From positions 124,001-188,000 of the IMG/VR virus record IMGVR_UViG_3300047476_002078: a DNA stretch of 64,000 nt; one strand, 5' to 3'. Below the pieces are notes generated by a model that did not search any database, was not told the DNA's origin, and saw nothing but the letters and a program-made list of their open reading frames with translations. This document shows positions 49,037-62,474 of the stretch, piece after piece (the first letter of the stretch is position 1; each line of letters starts with the position of its first letter). A program made the translations under genes and the position numbers.

Positions 49037-49528
49037 ATGAACCAAAGGCTTGATTGCATCTGTGTACAAAAACTTACAAATTACAATTTTATGGAGAAAG
49101 AATTTATGATTGCTCATGAAACAAACGTGCTATTGAATAGCGTTATAAACACTGTACGTAATTTAGATAATAAAAAATCTCAGTTAGGAGATCAAAGCTC
49201 TCTTTTTATTAAAAACATTACGCAAAAATTAAAATCAAATGAGATTCCTCCTGTGGAATTAGTTTTTACTCACTATGTAGAAGAACTTGGATGCGACATT
49301 GATTTTTGGGTCAAATGGGATGGAAAAATATTCTTAACATCTTCTGATGGTAACGATGACTATTCTCCTATACTTGGACAAAAAATTCAAAGCCGATTTA
49401 ATTTTGTTAAGATGATTCCAGTAATATTAAAAGATATGGAAAATCATTTTTCAAACGAGTTGAAAGAAATGGATTTTTTTATAGAAGGTGCTGAAAGCGA
49501 AGATGAAGAAGATATAAACAGTCTTTAA
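49037..49528 (+). CDS. hypothetical protein (lone plus-strand gene)
   Basis: Start may be the downstream ATG near 49105 (GGAG); TAA overlaps the convergent TAA. Confidence 0.7.
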   Translation: MNQRLDCICVQKLTNYNFMEKEFMIAHETNVLLNSVINTVRNLDNKKSQLGDQSSLFIKNITQKLKSNEIPPVELVFTHYVEELGCDIDFWVKWDGKIFLTSSDGNDDYSPILGQKIQSRFNFVKMIPVILKDMENHFSNELKEMDFFIEGAESEDEEDINSL

Positions 49529-50229
49529 TTTAGAGAGGGGATAGAATCCCCTCTCCTTATTTCTTTAAGCCTATTTTTCGTCAAAGTGTGTTCCACATAT
49601 CCCAAATGGCAAAGTAAACTATACCTTTCTTTTTTAACTTTTAGTTCTTCGACTCTATGAAGTTTAGTAAAATCAAGATTATTTACAGTAACCATTACGC
49701 CGTGATTTGGTAAAATTTTATCAATCTCTTCCACTGTTTTTTCATCTATTCCACCGTATTTATTTAACTTAGCTTTCCCTATTCCTAAATACCCTCCGTC
49801 TGTTTCATAAAAAACGTCTTTAGTTAAATATAAAATATTTGTCATAAAAGTTGAATCGTAACTGTCGGAGTGCCATACCATACCTGAATTTTTTGCATAA
49901 TTATTTATCATTGGACTACCTTGAGAAAAGGGTCCGAAACAATCAGTAAACCATTTAAAATATTTTGAATTAGATAAGCCTTCCCAAAAATCTTTAAAAA
50001 TTTTTGGAGCTTCTTCATTATAGGATGTCAATGTGTGTGAAGCCTCCCACTTTGAAATTAAAGGAGCATCATATCCAGCGGAAGAATAGTAACCATCTCC
50101 TGTAACGTAAATTTGACTTCGTACTTGTTCTAAAAAATAATCAGCTACTTCGAGATCAATTCTTGTTACGGTGTAACCGTCTTTAAAGAATTTATGAATA
50201 TCAAAATTATCTTTTATTTGTAGTTTCAG
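49525..50229 (-). CDS. 2OG-Fe(II) oxygenase, paralog 2 (extended to a CTG start)
   Basis: WHSD (HxD), LHRV distal His, ERYSL; frame open upstream of TTG 50031 to 50244 and N-terminal extension aligns with paralog 1. Confidence 0.8.
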   Translation of the reverse strand: MKLQIKDNFDIHKFFKDGYTVTRIDLEVADYFLEQVRSQIYVTGDGYYSSAGYDAPLISKWEASHTLTSYNEEAPKIFKDFWEGLSNSKYFKWFTDCFGPFSQGSPMINNYAKNSGMVWHSDSYDSTFMTNILYLTKDVFYETDGGYLGIGKAKLNKYGGIDEKTVEEIDKILPNHGVMVTVNNLDFTKLHRVEELKVKKERYSLLCHLGYVEHTLTKNRLKEIRRGDSIPSLN

Positions 50230-50963
50230 ATCATGCTCCAGTTTTTAGCTTTCAATGAATAAAGAACATTTGCTGAATAACCAAACTGGCATATCAAAGA
50301 AAATCTTTTTTTATTTGTTTTTAACGGTGGTACACGATGAACAAAATTAGGGTTTAAATTATTAGCTGTGACCATTACACCATGATTAGGCAAAATTTTT
50401 CCAGTAGGTATAACTTTCTCTTTTTCAATTTCTCCCGTGTATTCACAAACCCCAAACTCAACGTAACCTCCATCGCTTTCTGTGAATGTTTCTTCTGTGA
50501 GATATATCATGTTGATTAAAAATGAAGCATCTCTAAAATCATAATGCCAGCTTAGACCATCATTTTTACTATATTTCATCATTTGTTTTGATAGCTGTGA
50601 AAAATCTCCGAAGTGTTGAGTTAGAGGTTTGAAATAATTCTCTTTAGATAAATTACTCCAGAAATCATTAAAATAAGGTTTATCATCTTCTACGAAACCC
50701 ATGCCCATTTGAGGTGAACTCAAATTTTCCCCTTCTGGAACAGTAAAAGGTGTTACACACTCACAATAAAAAAGTCCTGTGTCTGTGTGATAAACAGGAT
50801 GCTCGTCAGAACTTATAACTGAAGGATAATTGAATTTTTGATTACGTATTTTTTTAAGTAAATTGTCAGCTATATCTACATTAATTTTGGATACAGCGTA
50901 ACCTTTATTAAAGAAATCATTAAGATCAATAGAGTCATTGAGTATTATCTGATTCTTTGTCAT
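50226..50963 (-). CDS. 2OG-Fe(II) oxygenase, paralog 1
   Basis: WHYD (HxD), DGGYVEFG, FVHRV distal His, KRFSL 2OG-binding Arg. Confidence 0.85.
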   Translation of the reverse strand: MTKNQIILNDSIDLNDFFNKGYAVSKINVDIADNLLKKIRNQKFNYPSVISSDEHPVYHTDTGLFYCECVTPFTVPEGENLSSPQMGMGFVEDDKPYFNDFWSNLSKENYFKPLTQHFGDFSQLSKQMMKYSKNDGLSWHYDFRDASFLINMIYLTEETFTESDGGYVEFGVCEYTGEIEKEKVIPTGKILPNHGVMVTANNLNPNFVHRVPPLKTNKKRFSLICQFGYSANVLYSLKAKNWSMI

Positions 50964-51324
50964 GTATGCCTAAATGTATAATTAATTTTAAAATCATTTT
51001 GTTTTGTGATTCCATTCGATTGAGTAAAACTTTAATCTCGTCATTGGACATTTTGCTTACTTCATAATTGTACTTAGCCAATATCCTATCTTGTTCTCCT
51101 AGCTTCTTTTGAGACATTAGAATAAATGGGGCTGTATAAGCAGCTTGAAATGATAAAAATAAAGTTAAAAATAAAAATGGGTAAGGGTCTAATCTTAATA
51201 TTCCAAAATAGTTAAAAAACACCCAAGCAATAATGAATAGCGTTTGAAATATTACAAACTTCCAAGAGCCTACAAAATTGGTCACAAAATCAGCTAATTT
51301 AGACCATCTTTTTTTCCTATCCAT
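50935..51324 (-). CDS. DUF1003-family membrane protein
   Basis: FVGSWKF...W...DPYPFLFLTLFLSFQAAYTAPFILMSQ signature. Confidence 0.85.
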   Translation of the reverse strand: MDRKKRWSKLADFVTNFVGSWKFVIFQTLFIIAWVFFNYFGILRLDPYPFLFLTLFLSFQAAYTAPFILMSQKKLGEQDRILAKYNYEVSKMSNDEIKVLLNRMESQNKMILKLIIHLGIHDKESDNTQ

Positions 51325-51333
51325 TTTTTCCTT

Positions 51334-51810
51334 TTACAATATTGATAAAACTTCATTTAGTTCCTTACCTATAAACATTTCTTTTTTAAAGTAATCAACT
51401 GTTGACTTTACTTGCGATGGTAAAAAGTAAGAGTCATTAATTACGTTTACAAGTACAGGAAACACTCTTATTAAAACTTCATCATATAGAGATTTGCTAT
51501 CTTCAGAGTAAGGAACAAAATAAGGGTCATTTCCAAATAGCAATTCCGAGTCTGATAAGTTTTCATAATAATCAAGACCAAAGTATTTTGATATAAGGGA
51601 TGCGTAAACAATAGCTACCATAAAAGATTTTGCAGGATATTGAAGAAAAGTGACTTCTTCTTTGAAGTGCTTTTCAATATCTTCTACTATTTCTTGGAAT
51701 GTGTAGAAATCTTTGACTAGGTAAATTTCCTCTTTTGATATGTCATAAATTGAGTCTGTTATGGGCTGGGTTTGATGATAAACTTTCTGTCGTAATTTGT
51801 GTTCTTTCAT
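51334..51810 (-). CDS. hypothetical protein within the radical SAM cluster
   Basis: 158 aa, overlaps the end of rSAM-4. Confidence 0.7.
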   Translation of the reverse strand: MKEHKLRQKVYHQTQPITDSIYDISKEEIYLVKDFYTFQEIVEDIEKHFKEEVTFLQYPAKSFMVAIVYASLISKYFGLDYYENLSDSELLFGNDPYFVPYSEDSKSLYDEVLIRVFPVLVNVINDSYFLPSQVKSTVDYFKKEMFIGKELNEVLSIL

Positions 51811-52705
51811 ACCACTCCAATAAAAATTTAAACCCGTTGCAAGAATTTTCTAAACTTTTAACATCTCTATAATGTTCTGTTAGGCATGTTCCAAAATAAT
51901 CACATTTACTGCATATTTTGTTCTGTTTAACTTTTATTTTTTCATTTTCTCTCCATGTAAAATATTCTTCTATATTTTCCATTTCAACAAAATGTTCTCT
52001 ATCATCACTATCAAAATCTAAAATGCCAAATTTTCCTGAAGGTGTGATGTAAACGTGATTGTCAGAAAAAGCGTTTCGTTCTTTTTTTATACTCTCAACT
52101 ATGTTGAACTCATTAACGAATACAGACTTTAATTGTACTTTGTTATTCAAAAACTTTTTAATAAATTCTTCAAAGTCTTTAAAAGTAACATTTAAGCTAT
52201 TGTATTGATTTGTGCTATACGGCTTAATTTCTACAGACTTTACATTTGAGATACTGTTTAATGTTTGAATCATATAATCAACATCAATATTTATGAGGCA
52301 TGGAGAAGCCAACATCAATACAGCAATATGCTTGTTAAGAGAAAGCATATTGCTTAAAGTATTTTTAAACCCTGATCTACATTCAAAATCAAAGGATACT
52401 GAAACATCAACGTCTTCTCTCATTAACACATCTGTAATTTTGGTAAGATTAGTTATGATGTTTATTTTTCCGCCATAATACTTTTTAATTATTAAGAAAA
52501 GTTCATCCAAGTATTCTTTAGAAAGTAACTGTATTTCTCCTCCGTACAAGTCTATATGTTCTATTTTTTCATATTGTGAAATTTGTTTTAAACGCAAATC
52601 AATATCTTTTAGATCAGTTGTTTTTGGGTCACTTAATTTATCACCTAGATAACAAAAGGGGCATCTAAGATTGCAAAGATATGTCGGATTAAGAGACACA
52701 TTCAT
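51743..52705 (-). CDS. radical SAM enzyme 4 (partial SPASM/twitch-like C-terminus)
   Basis: CNLRCPFC, YGGE, C-terminal CSKCDYFGTC...SC. Confidence 0.9.
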   Translation of the reverse strand: MNVSLNPTYLCNLRCPFCYLGDKLSDPKTTDLKDIDLRLKQISQYEKIEHIDLYGGEIQLLSKEYLDELFLIIKKYYGGKINIITNLTKITDVLMREDVDVSVSFDFECRSGFKNTLSNMLSLNKHIAVLMLASPCLINIDVDYMIQTLNSISNVKSVEIKPYSTNQYNSLNVTFKDFEEFIKKFLNNKVQLKSVFVNEFNIVESIKKERNAFSDNHVYITPSGKFGILDFDSDDREHFVEMENIEEYFTWRENEKIKVKQNKICSKCDYFGTCLTEHYRDVKSLENSCNGFKFLLEWYERTQITTESLSSNPAHNRLNL

Positions 52706-53805
52706 GACTGTCCAATATCTTTAAAATATTCTTTAAAGTGCTCTTTAACATCGTCTTTAGCCGATGATAACTGTGATTCTAAGTCTTGTTTTACAGCCAC
52801 AAGTTTAAGAATATCATCTGCGTTACCTTTCATTATTTTACAATGTTCCTCTACCAAACCAAGCTTTTTGTAATCTTTAATAGTTTTGTGACAGCCATTG
52901 CAAATATCAAACATTGGACAAGTAAGACATTCATCTTTCATCCTTTGTAATTCATAATGTTGCTTCAAAGGGGTAAAGAAATTACCTTGTTTTACTTCTT
53001 GATCGAAATCAATTCTATACTTTCCTTCATCTTCAAAATCATCATCTCCAAAAGCTCCGCAAGAGTGATAAGCCCCATTAGGCTGAAGACATCGAATATG
53101 ACTGTCACACTCTCTTGCGAGAGGGCAAGTCGTTCCCATTTTTTTAATTCTGACAGTCATTTGTTTTGTGTTGTATTCCCAAGGAGCCAAACCTTCCTTA
53201 TATACATCAAGATATATTTTGTATATTTTTCCTAAAAGAAAAGGTTTTGATTGGTCGCCTGAAGCCATGGCATAGTTAAGCTTACACTCAACTCCCATTT
53301 TCTTAGCTAATCTCACATTATCTATTGCAGTATCTTCGTTTTCTTCTGTGATTACAGATATAAATCCGGGGCGGTATCCAACTTTTTCAAGAAATAAATC
53401 AGACACTTTCCAAAAAATATCCTCTGTGAAAACTTTGTTTTTTGTTATACGTCTAGTGTTTCCATAGTTAAAAGATGTGGCTACGCTTACCCTGTCTTGC
53501 CTTTTAAAAAGTTTTGTCCATTTATCAGGGTACTTATAAAAATCCCATAAATTTGTAGTGAAAGAAACTATAGCTGGATATTTGTTATCATCTAAATGTT
53601 TCACTAGCTCCCAATAATAATCAGGGTGGATTACAAGAGGGTCGCCTCCGTTCACAATAATTGTTCTGGTATCTGGAAATCTTTTTAAGAAATCCACAAT
53701 ATATTGCATTGGCAGTATTTGTTTTTTATCTTCTGAAATGTTGGTAGAGCTACAGAAAGTACAGGCAAAATTACAAACTTCTGTAGGTTTAATAATTAAG
53801 TCCAC
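52702..53805 (-). CDS. radical SAM/SPASM enzyme 3
   Basis: IKPTEVCNFACTFC, NGGDP, C..C..C-x-G-C region, CLTCPMFDICNGC. Confidence 0.93.
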   Translation of the reverse strand: MDLIIKPTEVCNFACTFCSSTNISEDKKQILPMQYIVDFLKRFPDTRTIIVNGGDPLVIHPDYYWELVKHLDDNKYPAIVSFTTNLWDFYKYPDKWTKLFKRQDRVSVATSFNYGNTRRITKNKVFTEDIFWKVSDLFLEKVGYRPGFISVITEENEDTAIDNVRLAKKMGVECKLNYAMASGDQSKPFLLGKIYKIYLDVYKEGLAPWEYNTKQMTVRIKKMGTTCPLARECDSHIRCLQPNGAYHSCGAFGDDDFEDEGKYRIDFDQEVKQGNFFTPLKQHYELQRMKDECLTCPMFDICNGCHKTIKDYKKLGLVEEHCKIMKGNADDILKLVAVKQDLESQLSSAKDDVKEHFKEYFKDIGQS

Positions 53806-54911
53806 TTTTTATCTATCTCCCTAAACATTATTTTATAAAGACATTCTGACAGTTGTTTTCTTTCTGCAAAATAAACATGATCTTCCATCACAAAACAAGA
53901 AAATCCACATCTTCCAAAAAACTCACAACTTAAACACTCTTTTTTTGTAACAAAAGATTCGATAATATTGGCATTACTTTCATAATTGATTTTATGTTCA
54001 AATTCGCTAGGGTTGTATTGGAGTTGTCTGCAAGTTAAAATTCTACCGTTAGGAAGAATCGTAATTTTGTTCAAACTCATACAGGTCATCTGGTTTACAT
54101 CATTTTCAATCCACTGTTTTATTGGCTGAATTTCTGGAAATTCATTAATAACTTTAAGCAAGAAATCCAAAATGTCTTTGTCTGAAGGTACTAGCAATTG
54201 AGCGTTAGTTTCAGGGGTGTAATAATCGAAACTTATAGGAAAACCTTCATCATACAAGTATTTAAAGTAACTTGTATCAGAATTTAAAAACTTTTCGATA
54301 GTAGGTTTGGTCAAAACTAAATTAATAGTTCCTATATGCTTTTTAAATTTTATTATGTTTTTATGCCATAAGGTATTAACGTGATGAGCTACTGCTCGAC
54401 CATGAAAATCAAGAGAGGTTGTAATGCAAAATTCTATATTATTATTTTCTAATTTATTTAAAAACTCTTCAACTTTTTCTACTTCAGTAAAAAGACAATT
54501 TGTAACTAAAACAATATTGGCTTGTTTATTTAGTGTTTTAGCATGTGAATCAACTTTTTTTATCAATTCAAAATAGTCATCAAATTTGTTTCTTCCATCT
54601 TGAAAAATTTCTCCGCCCATTAGACAGATATTAAAACGAGTGCAAGAATTATCACTGATAAATTGATTGATAGGTTCAGCTTTTTCAATAATTTCTTCAA
54701 GACCTGTGGTATCATCGTGATCTTGCCAGCAAAAAGCACAACGTAAATTGCAAGCTTGAAAAAGACTTACTTCTACTTCTGCTTCAGAAGGAACTTTAGT
54801 TCGTAATAAAGACTTTATGTAATTTTCATCAACAGGACTTTGAAGTTTTGATTCCTTAAACTCTTGATAAGTTTTAGGTCCTTCTGTCACTATTGGAATT
54901 TTTTTCTTCAT
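53796..54911 (-). CDS. radical SAM/SPASM enzyme 2
   Basis: CNLRCAFC, MGGE, CMS...PNGRILTC, CLSCEFFGRCGFSC...C. Confidence 0.92.
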   Translation of the reverse strand: MKKKIPIVTEGPKTYQEFKESKLQSPVDENYIKSLLRTKVPSEAEVEVSLFQACNLRCAFCWQDHDDTTGLEEIIEKAEPINQFISDNSCTRFNICLMGGEIFQDGRNKFDDYFELIKKVDSHAKTLNKQANIVLVTNCLFTEVEKVEEFLNKLENNNIEFCITTSLDFHGRAVAHHVNTLWHKNIIKFKKHIGTINLVLTKPTIEKFLNSDTSYFKYLYDEGFPISFDYYTPETNAQLLVPSDKDILDFLLKVINEFPEIQPIKQWIENDVNQMTCMSLNKITILPNGRILTCRQLQYNPSEFEHKINYESNANIIESFVTKKECLSCEFFGRCGFSCFVMEDHVYFAERKQLSECLYKIMFREIDKKWT

Positions 54912-55086
54912 CTAAATATTTTCCCCACTTACCAATGGGACATTCGCTATTTTTAAGTCTGGCTTTTACAACCATGAAACAGCCACACTTTCCGCAAACA
55001 TCCATCTTTAACGGTTGCTTTAATTCTGGACAAGCTCTACAAATACCTATTCGATATTCGTAATTTTCTTCATCAACAAAAATCAA
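54874..55086 (-). CDS. small Cys-rich protein (DUF6171-like, tentative)
   Basis: RIGICRACP...CGKCGCFMVVKARLKNSECPIGKW. Confidence 0.75.
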   Translation of the reverse strand: MIFVDEENYEYRIGICRACPELKQPLKMDVCGKCGCFMVVKARLKNSECPIGKWGKYLDEEKNSNSDRRT

Positions 55087-55868
55087 ACAATACCTTCGGA
55101 TACCACAGCTTCATCAATTTTTTGTTCAATTAACGAAAGCTCTTGGCTCACTTTAGCAATCATATCAGGAGTAATATCCCCATTTGCTAAAGCGTCTATA
55201 CCTAAACATAAAGGGTTTTTTGAATTTAAAATATAATGAGTGAGCATTAATCCTTTAAAAGCCCCTTCCTCAAACTGCATCTTGAACCATTTCAAAGGGT
55301 GTTTACTAGGCTTACTTACAAACGCCTCAATGAATCCTTCAATTTGGATTACATTCAGTACATTAACTGTGATATACATAGCATCATTTACTTCTTCAAA
55401 TTCATCCAATGATATTTGAGGGTCGAAGGCTCGGACATACAAAAGCAAAATAGAATCTAAAAAAGTTGCCCACTTCTCCACCACTTCAGGATATTTGGCA
55501 ATAAATTCAGGTATTTCTTCATTGGATAAAACACTCTTTTCGATGACACTAATATGATCTACCTCTTTATAAAAAAGCATTATGTGTGCAATTGTTTGTG
55601 AAAGAGGTATAGATGCGTTGAAAGCTCTTAGTTTCATAAAAGCTGCTATAAAATCGTGTTTTTCAACTGTCGATGTTTCTGATAAATCAAAATCTGGATT
55701 TAACTCTAGGTTTGCTAGATATGTTAAAAGCTGATCTCCTTTTATTGAACTATTTGCATAATCCACAGTGTATTTAATTTTTTCTCTATTCATGAAAACT
55801 TCTTTCATGAGATCAACACTTAAAGGAATTGTTACACGTCTTTCAATAAATTCTACATTTGTTTCCAT
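55083..55868 (-). CDS. hypothetical protein within the radical SAM cluster
   Basis: Start re-assigned to METNVEF (ATG 55868); its AGGAG RBS lies in the last codons of the precursor gene. Confidence 0.8.
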   Translation of the reverse strand: METNVEFIERRVTIPLSVDLMKEVFMNREKIKYTVDYANSSIKGDQLLTYLANLELNPDFDLSETSTVEKHDFIAAFMKLRAFNASIPLSQTIAHIMLFYKEVDHISVIEKSVLSNEEIPEFIAKYPEVVEKWATFLDSILLLYVRAFDPQISLDEFEEVNDAMYITVNVLNVIQIEGFIEAFVSKPSKHPLKWFKMQFEEGAFKGLMLTHYILNSKNPLCLGIDALANGDITPDMIAKVSQELSLIEQKIDEAVVSEGIV

Positions 55869-55869
55869 T

Positions 55870-56427
55870 TTATCTCCTAGCTCTACTGCTATGGCATGAA
55901 CTGTGGCATGAACTGTGGCATGAGCTATGACATGAACAGTGACACCCATCTTGTGTTATACAAGCGACTCTGTAAGCCGCACCTTCTGAAAGGTCAGCGA
56001 TATTCTTTAAAGTAGTAACAAAGTTATTCAAAGCTGTAGCTGATACTACCCCTTGAGGTCCGGGCGTTGTATCTATTTGAGAAGTTAAAGCGGAAACATA
56101 GTAAGCACTTGTTAAAGCAGCAACACGGATACCATTATATACTGAGTAGTTTCCACACGAAGGATTGTATCTTCCCGACTCTAGCTGTCTGATTCTAGTT
56201 GATTCTTTGGCAAAATTTCTAATTTGCGTAATTACTTCATTAGCCGTTAAAACCGAACTCAGATTACTTTCGCCCATGGGAGTTAATTGTGTGTCCAAAG
56301 TACCACAATTAGGTTCGATGGAAGAATCTGTCCACCAAACAACTCTACTATTTTTGGGTGTAACTATATCATTATTAACATCGTTGATTATACCTGCTTT
56401 GGTAATAATCGTTCCTTGAATAGCCAT
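55870..56427 (-). CDS. candidate RiPP-like precursor/substrate with C-terminal CHxS repeats
   Basis: 185 aa ending GCHCSCHSSCHSSCHSSCHSSRARR; directly downstream of rSAM-1. Confidence 0.75.
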   Translation of the reverse strand: MAIQGTIITKAGIINDVNNDIVTPKNSRVVWWTDSSIEPNCGTLDTQLTPMGESNLSSVLTANEVITQIRNFAKESTRIRQLESGRYNPSCGNYSVYNGIRVAALTSAYYVSALTSQIDTTPGPQGVVSATALNNFVTTLKNIADLSEGAAYRVACITQDGCHCSCHSSCHSSCHSSCHSSRARR

Positions 56428-56436
56428 TAAAAACTC

Positions 56437-57522
56437 CTACTCTTGCCCGATGAAACCGTTTAAAACAGTTCTCATAAGGGTTGCATCTCCATAAGGAAAT
56501 TCTTTATTATATTTAAGCTTTTGCATTAAAGTTTTAGGAGCAGGGCAAACATCTCCATCCCAAGCTAGTTGGTGACAATCCCCATTACAAATATCGAAAA
56601 CATCGCATCCATAACAGCCCGGATTTCTAACTGCTTCACAAGCAATTTCCTTCATTCTTCCTTTTGAATACATGATTTCCAGAATTGGATAGTCTATGTA
56701 TCCATAAGGTTTTTCGACCGCAGAATTTGGACACCCTCCAACAGTTCCGTCAGCATTGAGTGTGAATATTTTTTGCTCACATGTTCTGCACCGACATCCG
56801 CTGTGGGTACTGTGAACTAAAGGTGAGAGGATAGAATTGAAAAATAAATTTTGAATTTTTTCATGATATTTATTCTCTATCGTCTGTTCCCACATCTTTA
56901 GAAAATAGTCTTGTAAATTTTTGTTTCCTGCGGCTAGATCATTATTACTTCTAGCGTTACCATTTGGAGTCATTCTTTCAAAATTAAGATAAGTGACTCC
57001 TAAATCAATCATTTTTTCTATGATTTGTTTTGGCTCTAATTCAAGAGTTTTAGAAGTAAGTGAAACCATAACTGTAACAGGGTATCCAAGCTTAACAAGA
57101 GTTCGGACATTATTCTCCCACAGTTCTTCAGCCTTTCTATTCGGAAATCTGATTTTATAATCCCATGAAGTTCCAAAGCTGTTTCTTTTTAACACCTCAT
57201 CGAAAAAAGCAATTTTAGCATCATCCAGTCTGTAGGTTAGGTTGGTTTGAATACCCCACCAAACCTCATCCCAAAGAGGGCTTACCTCTCTGTAAACTTT
57301 TAGCATATCTTCAATAGGAGCAAGCATAGGCTCTCCTCCGTGAAAGGATATGTGTCCACCTTTTTTAAAATTAGGAACGACTTCTTTTAATCTCTTGAAA
57401 AAACTAATAGTTTTATCTGGATTAAAAAATACTTTTTTGCCTTGAGAGCCGCTGGTGAAGCAATGCTCACAGTTTAACTGACATGTTTCTGTTGTTTTTA
57501 AATATACCATCAACTCATTCAT
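56437..57522 (-). CDS. radical SAM/SPASM enzyme 1
   Basis: LKTTETCQLNCEHC, FHGGEP, QTNL, CRCRTC...DGTVGGCPN, CYGCDVFDICNGDC...C. Confidence 0.95.
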   Translation of the reverse strand: MNELMVYLKTTETCQLNCEHCFTSGSQGKKVFFNPDKTISFFKRLKEVVPNFKKGGHISFHGGEPMLAPIEDMLKVYREVSPLWDEVWWGIQTNLTYRLDDAKIAFFDEVLKRNSFGTSWDYKIRFPNRKAEELWENNVRTLVKLGYPVTVMVSLTSKTLELEPKQIIEKMIDLGVTYLNFERMTPNGNARSNNDLAAGNKNLQDYFLKMWEQTIENKYHEKIQNLFFNSILSPLVHSTHSGCRCRTCEQKIFTLNADGTVGGCPNSAVEKPYGYIDYPILEIMYSKGRMKEIACEAVRNPGCYGCDVFDICNGDCHQLAWDGDVCPAPKTLMQKLKYNKEFPYGDATLMRTVLNGFIGQE

Positions 57523-57557
57523 AAAAACCTCTCGTTACCGTAACATTTTGTAAAAAA

Positions 57558-58109
57558 TTACAAGTCAACTGCGTTTTCTGGTTTTTCCGATTTTTTACAA
57601 CTGTCACTACAAAATTTTGCGTACTTACCTTTTATAGTAAAATAACTTCCACAGGATTGGCAATTTTTTAACAAGTCTGTACCGTAATATTTGCAGAACA
57701 AGCTAAAGTTGTACAAGATAATTCCAGTTATCCAGTCTCCGTTAGCATCTCCAATTTTTACGAAACGCTGTATATTACCTTTTTTATCTTCTTCTTTAAT
57801 CTCTCTTAAAGAAGATAAATAGAAATTAGCCCATTGCCCAAAATCCTTATCGAATTTTTTAAAGTTCATGATGTGATCTATATGATCTTTGAACTTTTTT
57901 TGAACAAGTCTAAAAGCTTCTAAATGATGTTCTTTGAAACTTTCTTTTCGTTCATTAACGGACACTTTGTCAGACTCATCGTTAAAAACAGAACCTAACT
58001 TCTCTAAGAGATTTGTAACATACTCTTCTGATATTTTAGAATTTAAAAATTTAACGAACAAAGGTTCTTCTTTTGGAAGAATACTTTTAGATTTCTTTTT
58101 TTCAGCCAA
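57558..58109 (-). CDS. protein with C-terminal treble-clef (CGNR-like) zinc finger
   Basis: CQSCGSYF...AKFCSDSCK; track start is TTG, so the true start is uncertain. Confidence 0.6.
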   Translation of the reverse strand: MAEKKKSKSILPKEEPLFVKFLNSKISEEYVTNLLEKLGSVFNDESDKVSVNERKESFKEHHLEAFRLVQKKFKDHIDHIMNFKKFDKDFGQWANFYLSSLREIKEEDKKGNIQRFVKIGDANGDWITGIILYNFSLFCKYYGTDLLKNCQSCGSYFTIKGKYAKFCSDSCKKSEKPENAVDL

Positions 58110-58113
58110 TTTT

Positions 58114-58962
58114 TCATCCCTTGTTTTGCAATACCGAGACTATTTTTTCGCAAATATCGTCAGGGAGTCTTGGTATTTCTATTTTTATCTTTATTATATG
58201 ATCTCCGTAACTATTTTTTCTGTTATCAAATAACCCCTTGCCTTTTAACCGTAACATCTGTTCAGGTTGTACGCATCTAGGTATTTGAACTTCTATTTTG
58301 CCGTGCAAAGTATCAGCCGTAATAGTGCTATTGTCAAAGACTTTAATGAAAGGCAAATTTACTGTTGAATATACGGTTGTTCCATTTATTTCAAAAATGC
58401 TATGAGGAGCGACTTGAATATTAACGATTACATCTTTTTCTTCTGCGATTAATGTTGTTCCTGAAGTAACGCTACGTGGTATAGAAACACTTGTTTGTTT
58501 GTGTGTGCTCGTTGAACCTACTCCGAAACATCTATCACAACTAGAGATAGCTCGACCTGTTTTATCGAAAGTTGTAGCTCCTGTTCCTCCACAATAATGA
58601 CAAGTTTCATTGATTTTATATTGAATAGTTTTGGTAACACCTTGAAATGCTTCTTCTAAAGTAAGAACAATACTAATATGTACTGTTTTCTTTCTGACGC
58701 TTCCCTGCATATTTGTAAAGAAGTCTTTAAAGTAAGTTTCAAGGTCGGAATCCCAAACAAAACTACCATGTGATCTGTTTTTATAAGACTTAACTTTTTG
58801 TTCAGTGTTTATGAGTTCGTAAGCTGATTGTATCTCACGAAATTTATCCTCATCTCCACCGCTTTTGTCTGGGTGATATTTTAGAGCTAAGGTTCGATAA
58901 GCTTTTTTAATTTCTTGCTGTGTAGCATTTTCAGAAACGCCGAGGATTTCAAACGGGTTCAT
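58114..58962 (-). CDS. dnaJ: DnaJ-class co-chaperone
   Basis: J domain with HPD, CxxCxGxG repeats (CHYCGGTG, CDRCFGVG), C-terminal LRLKGKGL. Confidence 0.93.
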   Translation of the reverse strand: MNPFEILGVSENATQQEIKKAYRTLALKYHPDKSGGDEDKFREIQSAYELINTEQKVKSYKNRSHGSFVWDSDLETYFKDFFTNMQGSVRKKTVHISIVLTLEEAFQGVTKTIQYKINETCHYCGGTGATTFDKTGRAISSCDRCFGVGSTSTHKQTSVSIPRSVTSGTTLIAEEKDVIVNIQVAPHSIFEINGTTVYSTVNLPFIKVFDNSTITADTLHGKIEVQIPRCVQPEQMLRLKGKGLFDNRKNSYGDHIIKIKIEIPRLPDDICEKIVSVLQNKG

Positions 58963-59342
58963 TTGCCTTCCTCAAACTTTCCCATTAAATCCGATATTAA
59001 ATTATCGAGTTCATCCAAATCTTTATACAACTGTTTTTTATTTGTTTCTAAATTAAGATTTACGGTAATTATTTTGGAATTTTTAGAACAGTGTGGGCAG
59101 ATACCTGCTAAGGTTTCTTTGAACATATAGTTACCGTTAATTAAATCCAAATCTATTGATTTGTTTTCAGAAAAATATTGAAAATGGTTTAAATTAGAAT
59201 TTAATGAATAGGTTACTCCGTTTATAATAACGTCTAAGAGAAACCCTTCAAAAAGGAATCGAGAACATTCTTTATTTTCGCACGTAAATACTTGGTTTGT
59301 TTTCATACACTTATTATATGAATCAGTTAGAATTTGAATCAC
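58959..59342 (-). CDS. zinc-ribbon hypothetical protein
   Basis: CENKEC and CPHC; true start probably MKTNQ near 59306. Confidence 0.6.
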   Translation of the reverse strand: MIQILTDSYNKCMKTNQVFTCENKECSRFLFEGFLLDVIINGVTYSLNSNLNHFQYFSENKSIDLDLINGNYMFKETLAGICPHCSKNSKIITVNLNLETNKKQLYKDLDELDNLISDLMGKFEEGK

Positions 59343-59620
59343 ATTTTAAAAAATTGTGGGAAAATCTGAAACTTTATAACCACATCGTAAAAAATTTGAA
59401 GAAACGAAATAATGCAAAGCAGGCTTCGGAAATAGCTGACAATTTTGAACGGGAAATAAAAAAAGATATTATACAGGATTTATTGAATTGGTATGTTTTA
59501 AAAAAACATTTTGGCGAAGAAATAGATGAAAACATTATCCGTAACGATGTTGTGCATAGAATTAATGGGGAACTGGCAAAGCTTGGAGTTCCTATGTTAG
59601 ATACTTCTATTTTACGGTAG
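59297..59620 (+). CDS. hypothetical protein
   Basis: True start probably ATG near 59317. Confidence 0.65.
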   Translation: MFSYTYYMNQLEFESHFKKLWENLKLYNHIVKNLKKRNNAKQASEIADNFEREIKKDIIQDLLNWYVLKKHFGEEIDENIIRNDVVHRINGELAKLGVPMLDTSILR

Positions 59621-59641
59621 AAACAATTTACCGTAGATTTT

Positions 59642-60334
59642 TTGAAAATATATTTGTATTCTTTTTTAATGATAGGATTCTTCAAAAAACACGCTGAAAA
59701 TATAAATGACTCTGAATTTATAGATTACATCAATACTCAAAGAAATTTACAAATAGATGATATTATTCCTTATGAAGTAGGTTACTACAGATGGAACCCT
59801 GCCGATAAAAAGAACTATAAAATCCAACCGTTTTTTGACAAGTCTGTATTTTTACCTATTTTTGATGATTTACTTACTCCTGTAGGTTTTGAATTAAGAA
59901 GCATTAAAGAAAAGAACCATTTCAAATATTTTGTTCCAAATGCAAGGTATCATTTTTACGGTTTAAATAAACGATCTCTGCAATCAATTTGGGAAACAGA
60001 AACAGTTTTTTTAACTGAAGGAACTTTTGATGCTATGACATTAGGTATTTGGAAACCTAATGTTTTAAGTCTCATGACAAACAAAGTTTCACAAAGCCAA
60101 AAATTATTTTTGAAAAGATATGTTACGGATATTTTCCTTTGTCTTGATTGGGACAAGGGAGGAATACGGGAAGAAAAGTTTATTATTGAAGATTTACAAA
60201 ATTACGGTTTTAATGTTAAAAAATTTCCTTACATTAGAGGAATAGATAACGCTAAAGATGCAAATCAATTTTTAAAACAGAGTGGAAGAGAAAAATTTTT
60301 AAGACAGATAAATGTAAGATTTAAAGAAATGTGA
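59642..60334 (+). CDS. dnaG: DnaG-like primase, catalytic core/Toprim
   Basis: FLPIFD...VGF..R, KYF, FYGL, VFLTEGTFDA, LCLDWDKGG, KDAN motifs. Confidence 0.75.
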   Translation: MKIYLYSFLMIGFFKKHAENINDSEFIDYINTQRNLQIDDIIPYEVGYYRWNPADKKNYKIQPFFDKSVFLPIFDDLLTPVGFELRSIKEKNHFKYFVPNARYHFYGLNKRSLQSIWETETVFLTEGTFDAMTLGIWKPNVLSLMTNKVSQSQKLFLKRYVTDIFLCLDWDKGGIREEKFIIEDLQNYGFNVKKFPYIRGIDNAKDANQFLKQSGREKFLRQINVRFKEM

Positions 60335-60340
60335 GGTTAT

Positions 60341-61372
60341 ATGGGTTTATTAAAAAAAGCAGCTACTTTTTCCGTAATTCAGGTTCAGGGAAATATTCCT
60401 GATCTTAATACGTTAAAGTCTTCAATCGAAGGTTCAACTACTCCAAATATTGAAGGGAGTACCGCTCCCGAATGTTTTAGTTTTTGTAAAATTAATGATG
60501 TGTTTGATAAAGAAGTTATTCAAGGAGATCAAACTATTGCGTTTGGGTTGAGACACGATAAAAAGGTCGTATCTAAATCCTTATTCAAAAAGAAATATTC
60601 TGAAGGTTTGAAAAAATTAAAAGTTGAAGCAAAGCAAGCAAAAAGAAAAGTTGAAAAAGATGAAAAGGTGATTCTCAAAGACAACATTTTAGCAAATCTT
60701 TATGCTGGGGCAAAACCTTTAGAAAAACTAATAGAAATTTTATGGGACACTGAAACTAAAACTATCTACGTAGGTACTGCTAACAAAGCTTTAATTGATG
60801 CCTTTGTTTCTCAATGCACTAAACTATTTCCAGAGATGGAACTTATTAGATGGCAACCTTTAAGCCCAGAAACTCAAAACTCAGATGTAAAAGGCAGTAA
60901 AGATAATTTTCAAAATGCTTTCTTTACTTGGGTTTACTATGAAACAAAAATCAATAAAGATAAATTTTGGATTCCTTTAAACATTACATTTGTGAATGAT
61001 TCAGCACAAGTTTCAATTAAAGGTGATACCGATATATCACTAGAATCTTATCTTTCAATTTACCACGGAAGATTGGTTGATAGCTTAGATATTGGTTATA
61101 GTGATGATGACCAGCAATATGAAATGACTCTGACTAGAGGAACATGGGCATTTAAAAAGTTTTTAACAAAACCTGAAATAGTCCACGAGAATTTAGATTC
61201 CGCTGCATTTGAAAGATCAAAATTATTTAAAGAAGTTACCGACAAATTCACAAAATTAGTTAAAGAGTTTGAAGAAATTAGAAATAATGATGATAAGAAT
61301 AGAAAATTTTGGAAATCTTTATCTGATATGGCATCGCAAAAAATAAAAGAAAGCTTAGGAGAATCTTTATGA
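60341..61372 (+). CDS. RdgC-like recombination-associated protein (tentative)
   Basis: FGLRHDKKVV...coiled coil...ILWD...IYVGTA..A pattern resembles RdgC. Confidence 0.5.
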   Translation: MGLLKKAATFSVIQVQGNIPDLNTLKSSIEGSTTPNIEGSTAPECFSFCKINDVFDKEVIQGDQTIAFGLRHDKKVVSKSLFKKKYSEGLKKLKVEAKQAKRKVEKDEKVILKDNILANLYAGAKPLEKLIEILWDTETKTIYVGTANKALIDAFVSQCTKLFPEMELIRWQPLSPETQNSDVKGSKDNFQNAFFTWVYYETKINKDKFWIPLNITFVNDSAQVSIKGDTDISLESYLSIYHGRLVDSLDIGYSDDDQQYEMTLTRGTWAFKKFLTKPEIVHENLDSAAFERSKLFKEVTDKFTKLVKEFEEIRNNDDKNRKFWKSLSDMASQKIKESLGESL

Positions 61373-62466
61373 TTATTTCTGTAGGTCAAAAACAATTAAA
61401 AAATGGATTAAAAGCAGTAAGAAAAGTTCTAGGTATGAATAAAGAATCAAAGTCTTTGTTCAGTAACGCTATCAAACTAGAAGCTAAAGAAGACAGTTTG
61501 AGCCTTCTTGGCACAAATGGAGAAACCATTTATTTTTGGAAAACTAAAGATACTGTTGTTGTAAATGCCGATGGGGTGGTTGGAATTGTAGCAGATAAAT
61601 TTATTACGGCAGTCGAGGCTCTTTCAGGTGAAGCTCCGATTGAATTAAATTATAATGCAGGCATCGTTTATATGAAATGCGGAAACAGGGAAGCAGAGCT
61701 TAAAACTGTTGAAGCTGATGAATTTCCAGAGTTTACTCCTGTGGAAAATTTAGTAAAATTTCCTTTTGATACAACAAAAATGTTTTCAAAAATTTCACAT
61801 ACTGTTGGTCGAGATATTAGTAAACCTAGACTTTTAGGATTACTTTCAGAATTCATTTCTGAAGGAGATCAAAAAAAGGTAGTTTTTTCGGCAGTAAATC
61901 CAAACAAAGCAAGCAGACTGATTGAAAAATTTGAAAGTTCTGATTCTCTCAGCATGAAAATAATTTTACCTGTTTTCATCGTCGATGAATCACTAGAATT
62001 CCCATTAAAAGGTTTAGCTACAACCAAGTCGAGATTGATTGCTGATTTTGGCGATTTAAAAATTATGACTCCTATGCCAGAAGATAGATTCGTTAATCCT
62101 GAAAACGCTTTTGCTACTCCAAAAGATAGTAAAATTGTAGGATTTAACAGGAAGCAATTAATTGATGCTTTGAAATACACTCGTGCAATGGCGGATAAGC
62201 ATGATTTGAAATCTAAATTTATTGTGAATGGTGATGTAACAGAGATTACTTCTTATACTGAAAATTCAAAATCAAAAGATTCTTTAAAAAGCAGAAGTAA
62301 TGAAAAAATGACTTTTTCTTTAAATTGTGAGTATCTTATTGAGTTACTTTCATGCTTAAATAAAGAAGACGTAGAATTTCATGTTGTAGGTAAGGGAACT
62401 TCGGGTCAAATTACTTATAGGACTGACAATTACCAATACGTTACTTCAATGTATAGCCAAGGATAG
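61369..62466 (+). CDS. dnaN: DNA polymerase III beta sliding clamp
   Basis: 365 aa three-domain length; LLGTNGE, DEFPEF, FNRKQLIDAL, FSLNCEYLIELL. Confidence 0.8.
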   Translation: MIISVGQKQLKNGLKAVRKVLGMNKESKSLFSNAIKLEAKEDSLSLLGTNGETIYFWKTKDTVVVNADGVVGIVADKFITAVEALSGEAPIELNYNAGIVYMKCGNREAELKTVEADEFPEFTPVENLVKFPFDTTKMFSKISHTVGRDISKPRLLGLLSEFISEGDQKKVVFSAVNPNKASRLIEKFESSDSLSMKIILPVFIVDESLEFPLKGLATTKSRLIADFGDLKIMTPMPEDRFVNPENAFATPKDSKIVGFNRKQLIDALKYTRAMADKHDLKSKFIVNGDVTEITSYTENSKSKDSLKSRSNEKMTFSLNCEYLIELLSCLNKEDVEFHVVGKGTSGQITYRTDNYQYVTSMYSQG

Positions 62467-62474
62467 AGGTTAGC

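What the first reader, a model, noticed from the sequence alone, without database searches (positions are those of the whole stretch)
55870..56427. Unusual precursor: about 155-aa folded-looking body plus a CHCS-(CHSS)4-RARR tail
Seen: the tail at 55885-55944 is five 4-residue units with varied codons (tgt/tgc, cat/cac, agc/agt), which suggests selection on the peptide rather than DNA slippage. The Thr/Ser/Asn/Val-rich body carries two xCG motifs and is far longer than a typical leader peptide. Inference: the substrate may be a structural (tail/baseplate-like) protein whose C-terminus is crosslinked into a rigid or metal-binding tip. Alternatively the body is a large leader and RARR is a processing or recognition signal. 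The unit is a Cys-extended variant of the His-Xaa-Ser repeat.
Basis: partly seen in the sequence, partly recalled or inferred. Interest (0 to 1): 0.8.

Follow-up and report, generated by a model that had tools for sequence, protein, structure and literature searches.

The report
Radical-SAM-matured Cys-His-tailed phage virion protein
This gene encodes a member of a large, unnamed family of phage proteins with a strictly conserved C-terminal Cys-His-x-Ser repeat that always sits beside four radical-SAM enzymes; a cultured-phage homolog is in the virion, and the same module also sits in chromosomes of predatory Bdellovibrio-like bacteria.

Summary
Window 55870-56427 (-) is a 185-aa ORF ending in CHCS-(CHSS)4-RARR.

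It is not a one-off. Every relative examined keeps the tail: 111 protein-search homologs and cultured-phage members, 141 ORFs in 118 IMG/VR loci, and 38 loci in genome assemblies. Bodies are only about 28% identical. Most tails have three C-H-x-S units followed by R-x-R-R at the very end.

The gene belongs to a conserved cassette: rSAM1, CHxS protein, a 260-aa protein, DUF6171, rSAM2, rSAM3, rSAM4, a 158-aa protein and 2OG oxygenases. The four radical-SAM/SPASM enzymes have one-to-one orthologs in freshwater and marine T4-like phages and in jumbo phages Atu_ph07, Phosso, RSL2/RSF1 and pPa_SNUABM_DT01.

Published proteomics found the Atu_ph07 homolog gp170 in virions, enriched in the top gel slice.

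The body models confidently but matches no solved structure.

27 of the 38 genome loci are Bdellovibrionota, some flanked by housekeeping genes.

Best reading: a structural protein whose tail is crosslinked by radical-SAM enzymes. The modification and its chemistry are inferred, not shown. It resembles HXS and CXXX-repeat systems but fails their membership tests.

The parts
55870..56427 (-). CHxS-tail protein, 185 aa. N-terminal alpha/beta domain of about 160 aa, then a disordered C-terminal tail.
   Evidence: ORF. 85 and 38 homologs in two protein searches. AF2 pLDDT 86.3, pTM 0.79; the tail blocks score 51-56. No PDB fold match. Only family members match in BFVD.
55885..55944 (-). Five C-H-x-S units (CHCS, then CHSS x4): the presumed modification site.
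   Evidence: Cys and His columns are invariant in 53 aligned homologs. 7 synonymous and 0 non-synonymous differences against L011.
55873..55884 (-). C-terminal R-A-R-R (family consensus R-x-R-R). Its codons also carry the AGGAG ribosome-binding site of the next gene.
   Evidence: R-x-R-R ends about 88 of 111 members. The end is kept where gene order differs, as in L001. It is absent in the 'CHGSI' subfamily, which also lacks rSAM2, rSAM4 and p158.
56437..57522 (-). rSAM1: radical SAM/SPASM enzyme, no RRE domain, always next to the CHxS gene.
   Evidence: CxxxCxxC at residues 14-21 and a C-terminal CX2CX5CX3C (translation). Pfam Radical_SAM; weak NCBIfam hits to CbpB, anSME, DarE and DynA at 48-54 bits. 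phrog_1802 at 5e-62. Orthologs score 518-609 bits in all loci.
55083..55865 (-). p260: conserved accessory protein of unknown fold (phrog_20767).
   Evidence: phrog_20767 at 1e-37. Orthologs present in every module. AF2 pLDDT 83, no PDB match.
54874..55086 (-). Small Cys-rich DUF6171 protein.
   Evidence: PF19668 at 1.7e-7. phrog_13558. Present in L001/L002 and L011.
53796..54911 (-). rSAM2: radical SAM/SPASM enzyme.
   Evidence: Orthogroup scores 446-548 bits against 37 or less across groups. Absent from loci of the I-ending subfamily.
52702..53805 (-). rSAM3: radical SAM/SPASM enzyme, the most conserved (50-72% identity across lineages) and universal.
51743..52705 (-). rSAM4: radical SAM enzyme with a partial SPASM/twitch-like C-terminus.
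   Evidence: Absent from loci of the I-ending subfamily.
51334..51810 (-). p158: conserved accessory protein (phrog_20737).
   Evidence: Orthologs in L001, L003, L009, L010, L011 and several Bdellovibrionota loci.
49525..50963 (-). Two 2OG-Fe(II) oxygenase-like genes (49525-50031 and 50226-50963) at the end of the cassette.
   Evidence: PF13640 and PF13661 just below cut-off. Paralogs follow the cassette in L001, L009, L011 and L037.
57558..58109 (-). p183: small protein with a C-terminal zinc ribbon, upstream of rSAM1. Other lineages have a cupin-like protein at this position.
   Evidence: Ortholog in L001 and L011. Cupin at the same position in L003, pPa_SNUABM_DT01 and the Chiangmaivirus group. 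Belonging to the module is inferred from position only.

Best explanation
The ORF encodes a folded phage structural protein. Its unstructured C-terminal tail, (Cys-His-x-Ser)n followed by Arg-x-Arg-Arg, is the dedicated substrate of a conserved cassette of four different radical SAM/SPASM enzymes plus accessory proteins and 2OG oxygenases.

Proposed course; only the gene content, conservation and virion presence of a homolog are shown:
1. The protein is made in the cytoplasm and its alpha/beta body folds.
2. The enzymes have no RRE leader-binding domain. They would act on the exposed tail, possibly presented by p260, DUF6171 or p158.
3. The universal pair rSAM1 and rSAM3 would work on the C-H-x-S units. 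They would make intramolecular crosslinks of the kinds SPASM enzymes are known to make: Cys thioethers, and/or three-residue His-to-Ser rings as in triceptides and dynobactin.
4. rSAM2, rSAM4 and p158 co-occur with the R-x-R-R end and would act on or through it.
5. The result would be a thiol-free, rigid, protease-resistant and possibly metal-binding knot. It would staple the protein into the baseplate or fibre region of the virion, or engage the host envelope.

The same device is used chromosomally by predatory Bdellovibrionota, which also have to attach to and breach Gram-negative envelopes.
For: Tail conservation:
- The tail is invariant across bodies about 28% identical: 111 of 111 protein-search homologs and cultured-phage members, 141 of 141 tail ORFs in IMG/VR loci, and 38 genome loci.
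- It is under purifying selection.

Linkage to the enzymes:
- The order rSAM1, CHxS, p260, rSAM2, rSAM3, rSAM4, p158 recurs with one-to-one orthologs in six or more phage lineages.
- Within-group HMM scores are 446-639 bits; between groups they are 46 bits or less.
- There is one CHxS gene per module in the ten reference loci L001-L010.
- 93 of 118 IMG/VR loci have rSAM orthologs within the fetched flank.

Enzyme type:
- All four carry CxxxCxxC. Three carry a full SPASM Cys motif (translations).
- The best, weak, similarities are to peptide or protein-modifying rSAMs: CbpB, anSME, DarE, DynA and PapB.

Co-variation of tail end and enzymes:
- The three loci whose tail ends in CHGSI keep rSAM1, p260 and rSAM3. 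They lack rSAM2, rSAM4 and p158 and carry a B12-rSAM instead.

Structural role:
- Atu_ph07 gp170 is a family member (296 aa, ends CHSSCHASCHNSRSRR).
- Its computed mass of 31,894 Da equals the 31.89 kDa given in the paper's Table S5.
- It was found in purified virions with 8 unique peptides and 35% coverage, and was most abundant in gel band 1. Proteins of about 30 kDa peak in bands 7-8.
- gp165-169 and gp171 (the module's enzymes and accessory proteins) are absent from the list (PMC6102473).
- gp170 opens the 170-215 structural cluster.
- The module abuts gp8/DUF4815, a baseplate-assembly gene, a central spike or giant structural genes in other lineages.

Body and tail in the model:
- The body models with high confidence and the tail is disordered.
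Against: - No modification has been observed anywhere. The link between enzymes and tail is guilt by association.
- The Atu_ph07 sample buffer as described contains no reducing agent. The top-of-gel enrichment could therefore be plain disulfide aggregation of a Cys-rich tail. That virion preparation was only PEG-purified and also contained some non-structural proteins.
- RSL2 ORF068 is annotated only as hypothetical while its neighbour ORF065 is called a virion structural protein. I could not read the RSL2 proteomics paper.
- In this window and its closest relatives the cassette sits next to DnaJ and replication genes, not structural genes.
- No RRE, protease or exporter was found. The RiPP analogy is therefore incomplete.
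- The co-variation of R-x-R-R with rSAM2 and rSAM4 rests on one clade, so it counts as one evolutionary contrast.
Confidence: 0.55

Rival explanations
1. Classical RiPP or cofactor precursor. The 160-aa body would be an outsized leader or carrier, as in proteusins, mycofactocin or PQQ. The modified CHxS tail would be cut off and act as a small peptide or cofactor during infection.
For: The core lies at the extreme C-terminus next to rSAM/SPASM enzymes and 2OG oxygenases. Repeat-type cores are typical of rSAM RiPPs (PMC9062424). The tail is disordered in the model.
Against: No protease, transporter or RRE was found in any version of the module. The body is a conserved, confidently folded domain. 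The body of the Atu_ph07 homolog is a virion component. The module lies among structural genes in several lineages.
Confidence: 0.15
2. Unmodified metal-binding tail. The Cys/His tail would simply bind Zn, Fe or Cu, or an Fe-S cluster. It might act as a structural metal site, or as an Fe-S donor for the twelve or so clusters the four SPASM enzymes need. The rSAMs would then act on another substrate.
For: Three to six Cys-His pairs at i, i+4 spacing are good metal ligands. Phage fibres and spikes are known to use His/Cys metal sites (general knowledge). Non-reducing gel behaviour is compatible with free thiols.
Against: No other candidate substrate is conserved in the module: a single Cys/His-repeat ORF per module in the ten reference loci. 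The near-invariant Ser at position 4 (310 of 366 units) and the C-terminal R-x-R-R are not explained by metal binding. The tail end type co-varies with enzyme content. The rSAM1-CHxS adjacency holds in the phage reference loci except L001/L002, where p260 and DUF6171 intervene.
Confidence: 0.15
3. DNA-entry or counter-defence factor mirroring the bacterial HXS system. A virion-carried, rSAM-matured, basic HxS-repeat protein would be ejected into the periplasm. There it would escort DNA or neutralise HxsA-like barriers.
For: Each unit contains H-x-S and the end is basic. HxsA is an rSAM-matured HxS-repeat effector that binds DNA in the periplasm (PMC13128918). The homolog is virion-borne.
Against: None of the proteins meets the Hxs models. 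The body shows no significant similarity to peptidoglycan-binding domains: the Foldseek OmpA-like hits have E of 0.3 or more and TM of 0.2 or less. There are no functional data.
Confidence: 0.1
4. Artefact. A slippage-generated low-complexity end of a spurious or decaying ORF.
For: There is a 12-nt tandem period, and two of the five units are identical in DNA.
Against: Hundreds of homologs have the same tail. Tail differences between strains are synonymous only. Identical sequence occurs in independent metagenomes. The body is confidently folded.
Confidence: 0.01

Closest known systems
HXS antiphage system (HxsA substrate with His-Xaa-Ser repeats; rSAM enzymes HxsB and HxsC; HxsD). PMC13128918.
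   Same: A full-size protein, not a short peptide, carries tandem H-x-S-containing, basic repeats. It is matured by more than one radical SAM enzyme plus a small accessory protein. The system acts in the phage-host conflict at the cell envelope.
   Different: - Here the unit is C-H-x-S with an invariant Cys, at the extreme C-terminus.
- There are four rSAMs, none orthologous to HxsB or HxsC (30 and 27 bits against cut-offs of 370 and 268).
- There is no HxsA or HxsD match, no signal peptide and no peptidoglycan-binding domain.
- It is encoded by phages and Bdellovibrionota rather than as a defence island.
CXXX-repeat radical-SAM target systems (NCBIfam TIGR04117 target, TIGR04115 maturase). 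Also Pfam 38.1 PF27846, which an atlas lookup attaches to some viral clusters near this protein.
   Same: Cys at every fourth residue in a C-terminal repeat, next to a SPASM-type rSAM. Atlas neighbours of the body alone are viral proteins of about 200 aa, of which 19-84% per cluster carry PF27846.
   Different: The target model scores 13.7 bits against a cut-off of 50, and the maturase model 19.4 against 350. The invariant His, the Ser and the R-x-R-R end are specific to this family, as are the large folded body, the four-enzyme cassette and the virion association. PF27846 is not in the local Pfam copy, so membership could not be tested.
Short SPASM rSAMs that lack an RRE domain: anaerobic sulfatase-maturing enzyme (anSME) and DynA (dynobactin).
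   Same: Enzymes of about 360 aa with the rSAM motif at the N-terminus, no RRE and a full SPASM domain. These are the best, though weak, full-length NCBIfam matches of rSAM1 and rSAM3. From my own knowledge, not checked here:
- anSME acts on a whole protein at C/S-x-P/A-x-R, and the last unit here is C-H-[S/G]-S-R.
- DynA makes a His(i) to residue(i+2) link, the spacing of H-x-S.
   Different: Scores are far below family cut-offs (48-54 bits against 349-450). The substrate motifs differ. No chemistry is known for these phage enzymes.
Metal-binding His/Cys motifs of phage fibres and spikes (HxH iron sites of T4 gp37, PAAR tips). From my own knowledge, not checked here.
   Same: Cys/His-rich element in a phage protein encoded with baseplate or fibre genes.
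   Different: Those sites lie inside folded trimeric beta-structures and need no modifying enzymes. Here the element is a disordered C-terminal tail tied to four rSAMs.

Membership tests
HXS system (HxsABCD) | Substrate matches the HxsA model (TIGR03979, His-Xaa-Ser repeat protein) | tested here: not met
   No hit at E<=1 for the window protein or any of 53 family members.
HXS system (HxsABCD) | Maturases are HxsB (TIGR03978) and HxsC (TIGR03977) equivalogs | tested here: not met
   rSAM1 against HxsB: 30.2 bits, cut-off 370. rSAM3 against HxsC: 27 bits, cut-off 267.9.
HXS system (HxsABCD) | HxsD accessory protein present | tested here: not met
   The non-rSAM module proteins p260, p158 and p183 have no NCBIfam hit, and DUF6171 only a chance-level hit to ribosomal protein L31, so none matches HxsD.
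HXS system (HxsABCD) | Tandem H-x-S repeats in the substrate | tested here: met
   Every unit C-H-x-S contains H-x-S. Ser occupies position 4 in 310 of 366 units.
CXXX-repeat rSAM target system (TIGR04117 / TIGR04115) | Cys every fourth residue in a C-terminal repeat | tested here: met
CXXX-repeat rSAM target system (TIGR04117 / TIGR04115) | Target and maturase reach the curated model cut-offs | tested here: not met
   TIGR04117: 13.7 bits against 50. TIGR04115: 19.4 bits against 350.
Pfam 38.1 PF27846 (Cxxx-repeat rSAM target domain) | Match to the Pfam model | not testable with these tools
   The local Pfam copy lacks the model, with 0 Pfam hits for 53 members. Atlas neighbour clusters carry it in 19-84% of members. 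This is a lead only.
RiPP biosynthetic cluster (general definition) | Precursor gene clustered with dedicated modifying enzymes | tested here: met
   Conserved synteny with four rSAM orthogroups.
RiPP biosynthetic cluster (general definition) | Leader recognition element (RRE/PqqD) and a leader protease or exporter | tested here: not met
   No such domain appears in any module protein by Pfam, NCBIfam or PHROGs. The rSAM motif starts at residues 10-20 in rSAM1, rSAM3 and rSAM4.
RiPP biosynthetic cluster (general definition) | Post-translational modification of the core | not testable with these tools
   Needs mass spectrometry.
Radical SAM / SPASM peptide-protein maturases | CxxxCxxC cluster motif and C-terminal CX2CX5CX3C auxiliary-cluster motif | tested here: met
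   All four have CxxxCxxC. rSAM1 and rSAM2 have CX2CX5CX3C, rSAM3 has the near-variant CX2CX5CX2C, and rSAM4 has a partial motif (translations). Pfam Radical_SAM scores 26-41 bits. The SPASM model TIGR04085 scores about 20 bits against a cut-off of 27, so it is sub-threshold.
Anaerobic sulfatase-maturing enzyme and its substrate motif | anSME equivalog, and C/S-x-P/A-x-R in the substrate | tested here: not met
   TIGR03942: 52.6 bits against 349. The last unit C-H-[S/G]-S-R keeps the Cys-to-Arg spacing but not P/A.
Phage virion structural protein | Detected in purified virions | tested here: inconclusive
   Met for the homolog Atu_ph07 gp170 in published ESI-MS/MS, with the mass match verified. 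Not tested for this uncultured phage or for other lineages.

The most novel reading that the evidence does not exclude
A radical-SAM-crosslinked Cys/His knot on a virion protein would be the first case of RiPP-type radical chemistry used to build a virus particle. The same device would be shared by large myoviruses (freshwater, marine T4-like, and jumbo phages of Ralstonia, Burkholderia, Agrobacterium, Sinorhizobium and Pseudomonas) and by predatory Bdellovibrionota. It could be a common tool for gripping or breaching Gram-negative envelopes, and possibly the phage-side counterpart of the rSAM-matured HxS effector of the bacterial HXS defence.
Probability: 0.3. Interest if true: 0.9.

Novelty: new variant of a known kind. 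Interest (0 to 1): 0.8.

Why it matters
Radical SAM/SPASM maturases are known for small secreted peptides, cofactors, sulfatases and, recently, the HxsA defence effector. A dedicated four-enzyme cassette that matures a virion protein would open a new area: covalent radical chemistry in virus assembly or host entry.

The family is large:
- Tara Oceans and lake metagenomes.
- Thirteen cultured jumbo phages (15 database records), which are tractable in the laboratory.

Every member looked up in public records is labelled 'hypothetical protein'.

Its presence among housekeeping genes in Bdellovibrionota links phage and predator biology. It also gives a second experimental entry point.

The enzymes are four new SPASM subfamilies with an easily assayed repeat substrate, so they are attractive for enzymology.

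Tried and rejected
- **Direct searches against cultured phages.** tblastn of the window protein and of P0027 found nothing, and megablast of 10 kb found nothing. These were false negatives caused by divergence and the low-complexity filter. The cultured members were recovered through the neighbouring rSAM1 and p260 genes and then confirmed.
- **Fold of the body.** Foldseek against PDB gave no match at E<=0.001. The top hits are OmpA-like peptidoglycan-binding domains at E 0.3-2, probability 0.06 or less and TM 0.2 or less. I rejected them as noise, tempting as they are given HxsA. A profile search against PDB sequences found nothing.
- **Fold of p260.** The model is good (pLDDT 83) but has no PDB match. 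The atlas search gave only noise.
- **The search for related loci with alignment A1.** I replaced it with a degenerate DNA pattern for the tail. 9 of the 47 genome hits were chance matches not at an ORF end.
- **Wider context of the Mb-scale Bdellovibrionota loci.** Those proteins are not on record for the look-up of encoding contigs. Only 8 kb per locus could be examined.
- **Literature.** No paper was found on this module, on CXXX or CHxS repeats in phages, or on Bdellovibrio radical SAM systems of this type. The Haft and Basu 2011 paper and the RSL2/RSF1 proteomics paper are not held.
- **Slippage artefact.** Rejected.
- **Repeat-number polymorphism within the population.** Not seen, but contigs drop rare variants.
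- **Transcription.** One identical 211-nt contig in a lake metatranscriptome library lies inside the gene. DNA carry-over cannot be excluded, so I make no claim.
Full report
**1. The observation**

Window 55870-56427 on the minus strand is an ATG-initiated ORF of 185 codons. Its last 25 residues read G-CHCS-CHSS-CHSS-CHSS-CHSS-RARR.

A run of three or more CH.. units occurs once in the six-frame translation of the 64-kb window. It never occurred in 200 shuffles.

Cys, His and Ser codons vary between units. Units 3 and 4 are identical in DNA, however, and Tandem Repeats Finder reports a 12-nt period with 84% matches. Five units, against a family norm of three, therefore look like a lineage-specific DNA duplication that selection has kept.

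The real proof of peptide-level selection lies elsewhere:
- Against a related strain (L011) the 26 tail codons differ at 7 synonymous and 0 non-synonymous sites. The body differs at 43 and 17.
- The three terminal Cys-His pairs are the only invariant columns, apart from the start Met, in an alignment whose mean identity is 28%.

Identical sequence over the repeat is present in independent 2018 lake-water metagenomes. The source is a freshwater phage.

**2. A large family, all with the same tail**

Two protein searches returned 85 and 38 homologs of 170-260 aa, all from metagenomes and all unnamed. With four cultured-phage members added, all 111 sequences carry a run of CHxx units:

| Feature | Count |
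|---|---|
| 3 units | 93 |
| 4 units | 4 |
| 5 units | 5 |
| 6 units | 7 |
| 2 units | 2 |
| Position 4 is Ser | 310 of 366 units |
| Position 3 | mostly Ser or Gly |
| Ends RGRR / RARR / RSRR / RNRR | 56 / 13 / 12 / 4 |
| Ends CHGSI (one subfamily) | 10 |

A degenerate DNA pattern for (CHxx)3-RxRR-stop was expected to match by chance about 0.1 times in the genome collection. This is my own estimate from its roughly 43 bits of information. It hit as follows:
118 of these 120 loci have an ORF ending in the tail. All 141 such ORFs match the family HMM. 23 loci carry tandem pairs, many of a shorter subfamily of 125-140 aa.
- 47 stretches in the species-representative genome set.

**3. The cassette**

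The gene is flanked on the same strand by four radical SAM genes. Each carries CxxxCxxC. Three carry a full SPASM-type Cys motif and the fourth a partial one (translations). Accessory genes are a 260-aa protein (phrog_20767), a DUF6171 mini-protein, a 158-aa protein (phrog_20737) and two 2OG-Fe(II) oxygenase-like genes.

BLAST and HMM comparison of eleven reference loci shows four separate orthogroups. Within-group scores are 446-639 bits, and between-group scores are 46 or less. They lie in a conserved order: rSAM1, CHxS, p260, (DUF6171), rSAM2, then rSAM3, rSAM4 and p158.

The loci represent these lineages:
- freshwater relatives of the window;
- marine T4-like contigs, also present in Tara data;
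- Agrobacterium phage Atu_ph07 and Sinorhizobium phage Phosso;
- the Chiangmaivirus group (RSL2, RSF1, FLC phages, SURPRISE13);
- Pseudomonas phage pPa_SNUABM_DT01.

Each of the ten reference loci L001-L010 has one CHxS gene. 93 of 118 IMG/VR loci have an rSAM ortholog inside the fetched flank.

None of the enzymes has room for an N-terminal RRE domain. No protease or exporter is present.

Their best NCBIfam similarities are to CbpB, anSME, DarE, DynA, PapB and TIGR04083. All are weak (35-54 bits) and far below the cut-offs. These are new SPASM subfamilies.

**4. Co-variation of tail end and enzymes**

Three loci have a tail ending in CHGSI instead of R-x-R-R (L005/L006, L015, L016). They keep rSAM1, p260 and rSAM3. 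They lack rSAM2, rSAM4 and p158, and carry a B12-binding rSAM instead.

This suggests a division of labour. rSAM1 and rSAM3 would serve the C-H-x-S units. rSAM2, rSAM4 and p158 would serve the basic end. The three loci form one clade, so this is a single contrast and only a lead.

**5. What the protein is**

The AlphaFold2 model built on 53 homologs is confident (mean pLDDT 86.3, pTM 0.79). The alpha/beta body ends in a strand at residues 154-159. From about residue 160 the tail is unstructured, with block pLDDT of 51-56.

Foldseek finds no solved structure. Among predicted viral structures it finds only uncharacterised family members, including Atu_ph07 gp170. The body is therefore a family-specific fold.

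The key external evidence comes from the Atu_ph07 paper (PMC6102473):
- Supplementary Table S5 lists gp170 among proteins identified by ESI-MS/MS in purified virions. It is recorded as a hypothetical protein of 31.89 kDa, with 8 unique peptides and 35% coverage, in bands 1-9 and most abundant in band 1.
- I confirmed that RefSeq gp170 is the family member. It ends in CHSSCHASCHNSRSRR, and its computed mass of 31,894 Da equals the tabulated value. The neighbours gp176 and gp177 also match.
- In that gel, proteins of about 30 kDa peak in bands 7-8, and 120-kDa proteins in bands 1-2. gp170 therefore runs anomalously high.
- gp165-169 and gp171, the module's enzymes and accessory proteins, are absent from the list.
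- gp170 is the first gene of the 170-215 structural cluster.

Two caveats apply. The sample buffer as described has no reducing agent, and the virions were only PEG-purified. Disulfide aggregation is therefore an alternative to enzymatic crosslinks.

Synteny points the same way. The module lies next to these genes:
- gp8 and DUF4815 giant-protein genes in marine contigs;
- a 13-kb structural gene, itself followed by baseplate-wedge genes, in Atu_ph07 and Phosso;
- a baseplate-assembly gene and a virion structural gene in RSL2;
- the central spike in pPa_SNUABM_DT01.

In the window and its nearest relatives it instead lies beside DnaJ and the replication genes.

**6. Beyond phages**

Of the 47 genome hits, 9 are chance matches not at an ORF end. 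The other 38 are true members with module genes nearby. 27 of the 38 are assemblies of Bdellovibrionota: Bacteriovoracaceae, Halobacteriovoraceae, Bdellovibrionaceae and Pseudobdellovibrionaceae. Three are on contigs of 1.3-2.8 Mb.

The flanks are cellular:
- NrdR, NusB and YceI lie directly upstream of rSAM1 in L038.
- Signal peptidase II lies beside the module in both L039 and L060. L060 also has a response regulator and LolA.
- Among 56 flanking ORFs from 12 such loci, no capsid, terminase, portal or sheath family was hit.
- Three of those ORFs carry the Peptidase_S74 intramolecular-chaperone domain typical of phage fibres. One of them also has a pilin-type N-terminal methylation motif. Two are B12-rSAMs.

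The bacterial proteins share the phage N-terminal motif and show no obvious signal peptide.

Bdellovibrio is known to use phage-fibre-like chimeric proteins to recognise prey (PMC10769870, listed). The module thus appears to be a cellular trait of predatory bacteria as well as a phage trait. The remaining genome hits are mostly 30-250-kb contigs in MAGs of other phyla. I take these to be mis-binned phage genomes, which is an inference.

**7. Mechanism**

*Shown:*
- a folded protein with an invariant Cys/His/Ser/Arg tail;
- near-obligate linkage to four distinct SPASM-type rSAMs;
- virion presence of one homolog.

*Inferred:*
- The tail is the substrate.
- The universal rSAM1 and rSAM3 crosslink the units.
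- The product is a rigid, thiol-free knot that staples the protein into, or projects from, the baseplate or fibre apparatus.

*Chemistry, a guess.* Precedent from my own knowledge suggests two options. One is Cys thioethers, as in sacti- and ranthipeptides and QhpD. The other is His(i) to residue(i+2) links, as in triceptides and dynobactin, which fit H-x-S. The Cys-to-Arg spacing of the last unit recalls the anSME motif. I put 0.55 on the general model and much less on any specific bond.

**8. Comparison with known systems**

The closest described system is the HXS antiphage system, in which HxsB and HxsC mature the HxS-repeat effector HxsA. The logic is similar: a protein-sized substrate, repeats containing H-x-S, and several rSAMs. 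Every membership test fails, however.

The CXXX-repeat target systems share the Cys periodicity but also fail on model scores.

An atlas lookup shows that neighbouring viral clusters carry a Pfam 38.1 domain, PF27846, labelled as a Cxxx-repeat rSAM target. Curators may therefore already have flagged the tail. I could not test this.

I found no paper on the module. All public records of members looked up say 'hypothetical protein'.

**9. Verdict**

The structural-protein reading is supported by independent published proteomics and by synteny. The modification itself is untested.

I rate it a new variant of a known kind: rSAM-matured repeat substrates, here applied to a virion protein and shared with predatory bacteria. 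Interest is 0.8.

Noticed in passing
window 55870-55884: The R-A-R-R codons (AGA GCT AGG AGA) contain the AGGAG ribosome-binding site of the next gene, p260, whose ATG at 55865 lies 4 nt after the stop. The R-x-R-R end is kept where the downstream gene differs, so it is not merely an RBS constraint.
   Followed up: partly
window 58114-58962 and 59642-63893: A phage DnaJ-like chaperone with a zinc-finger region lies directly upstream of the cassette, also in L001 and L011. A divergent replication block follows: Toprim primase, an RdgC-like 343-aa protein, a sliding-clamp beta-like 365-aa protein and a clamp-loader 472-aa protein. Domain names come from the near-identical locus L011.
   Followed up: partly
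window 1-44000 versus 44000-64000: There is a compositional and strand switch near 44 kb. The left part has GC 0.33-0.43 (mostly 0.36-0.43) and is packed with small plus-strand ORFs, mostly without PHROG matches. The right part has GC 0.31-0.33 and is mostly minus strand up to about 59.3 kb, then plus strand. No tRNA genes were found.
   Followed up: no
window 24680-25825 and 26158-26889: An AAA-type ATPase (phrog_3757, 8e-53) and a glutamine amidotransferase resembling the GlmS N-terminus (phrog_4736, 6e-25) lie among otherwise unknown small genes.
   Followed up: no
window 50935-51324: A 129-aa predicted membrane protein lies inside the cassette between p158 and the oxygenases. It is DUF1003 in the L011 ortholog. 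Its link to the system is unknown.
   Followed up: no
IMG/VR loci such as L117, L122, L126, L129, L131, L136; genome loci L034, L044, L061: A short subfamily of 125-140 aa with the same tail occurs as tandem gene pairs. Often no rSAM lies within the fetched flank: only 9 of 30 short-only loci have one. The rSAMs may be farther away, or these proteins may be modified in trans.
   Followed up: partly
L021:5955-7139 (-) and L027:6610-7611 (-): In Bdellovibrionota loci the module sits next to proteins with a C-terminal Peptidase_S74 fibre-chaperone domain. The L021 protein also starts with a pilin-type N-terminal methylation motif, an unusual pilin-fibre chimera.
   Followed up: partly
L005:6360-8300, L015:14109-15446, L016:5428-7320, L024:4283-6121, L053:2152-3876: B12-binding radical SAM enzymes occur in the CHGSI-ending phage subfamily, where rSAM2 and rSAM4 are missing, and in some Bdellovibrionota loci. 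This hints at methylation chemistry in those variants.
   Followed up: partly
window 55886-55939 in run X4: Contig word depth rises to about 30 over the repeat, against 3-12 on the flanks. This is probably because relatives' repeat DNA collapses onto it, which is a caution for assemblies of this region.
   Followed up: no
L045 (Dysosmobacter segnis strain BX15, 4.3-kb contig) and L063 (Methanobacteriota MAG, 45-kb contig): Family members with p260 and rSAM2 orthologs turn up in a gut Firmicute isolate assembly and in an archaeal MAG. They are probably phage contigs or mis-binning, but I did not check.
   Followed up: no
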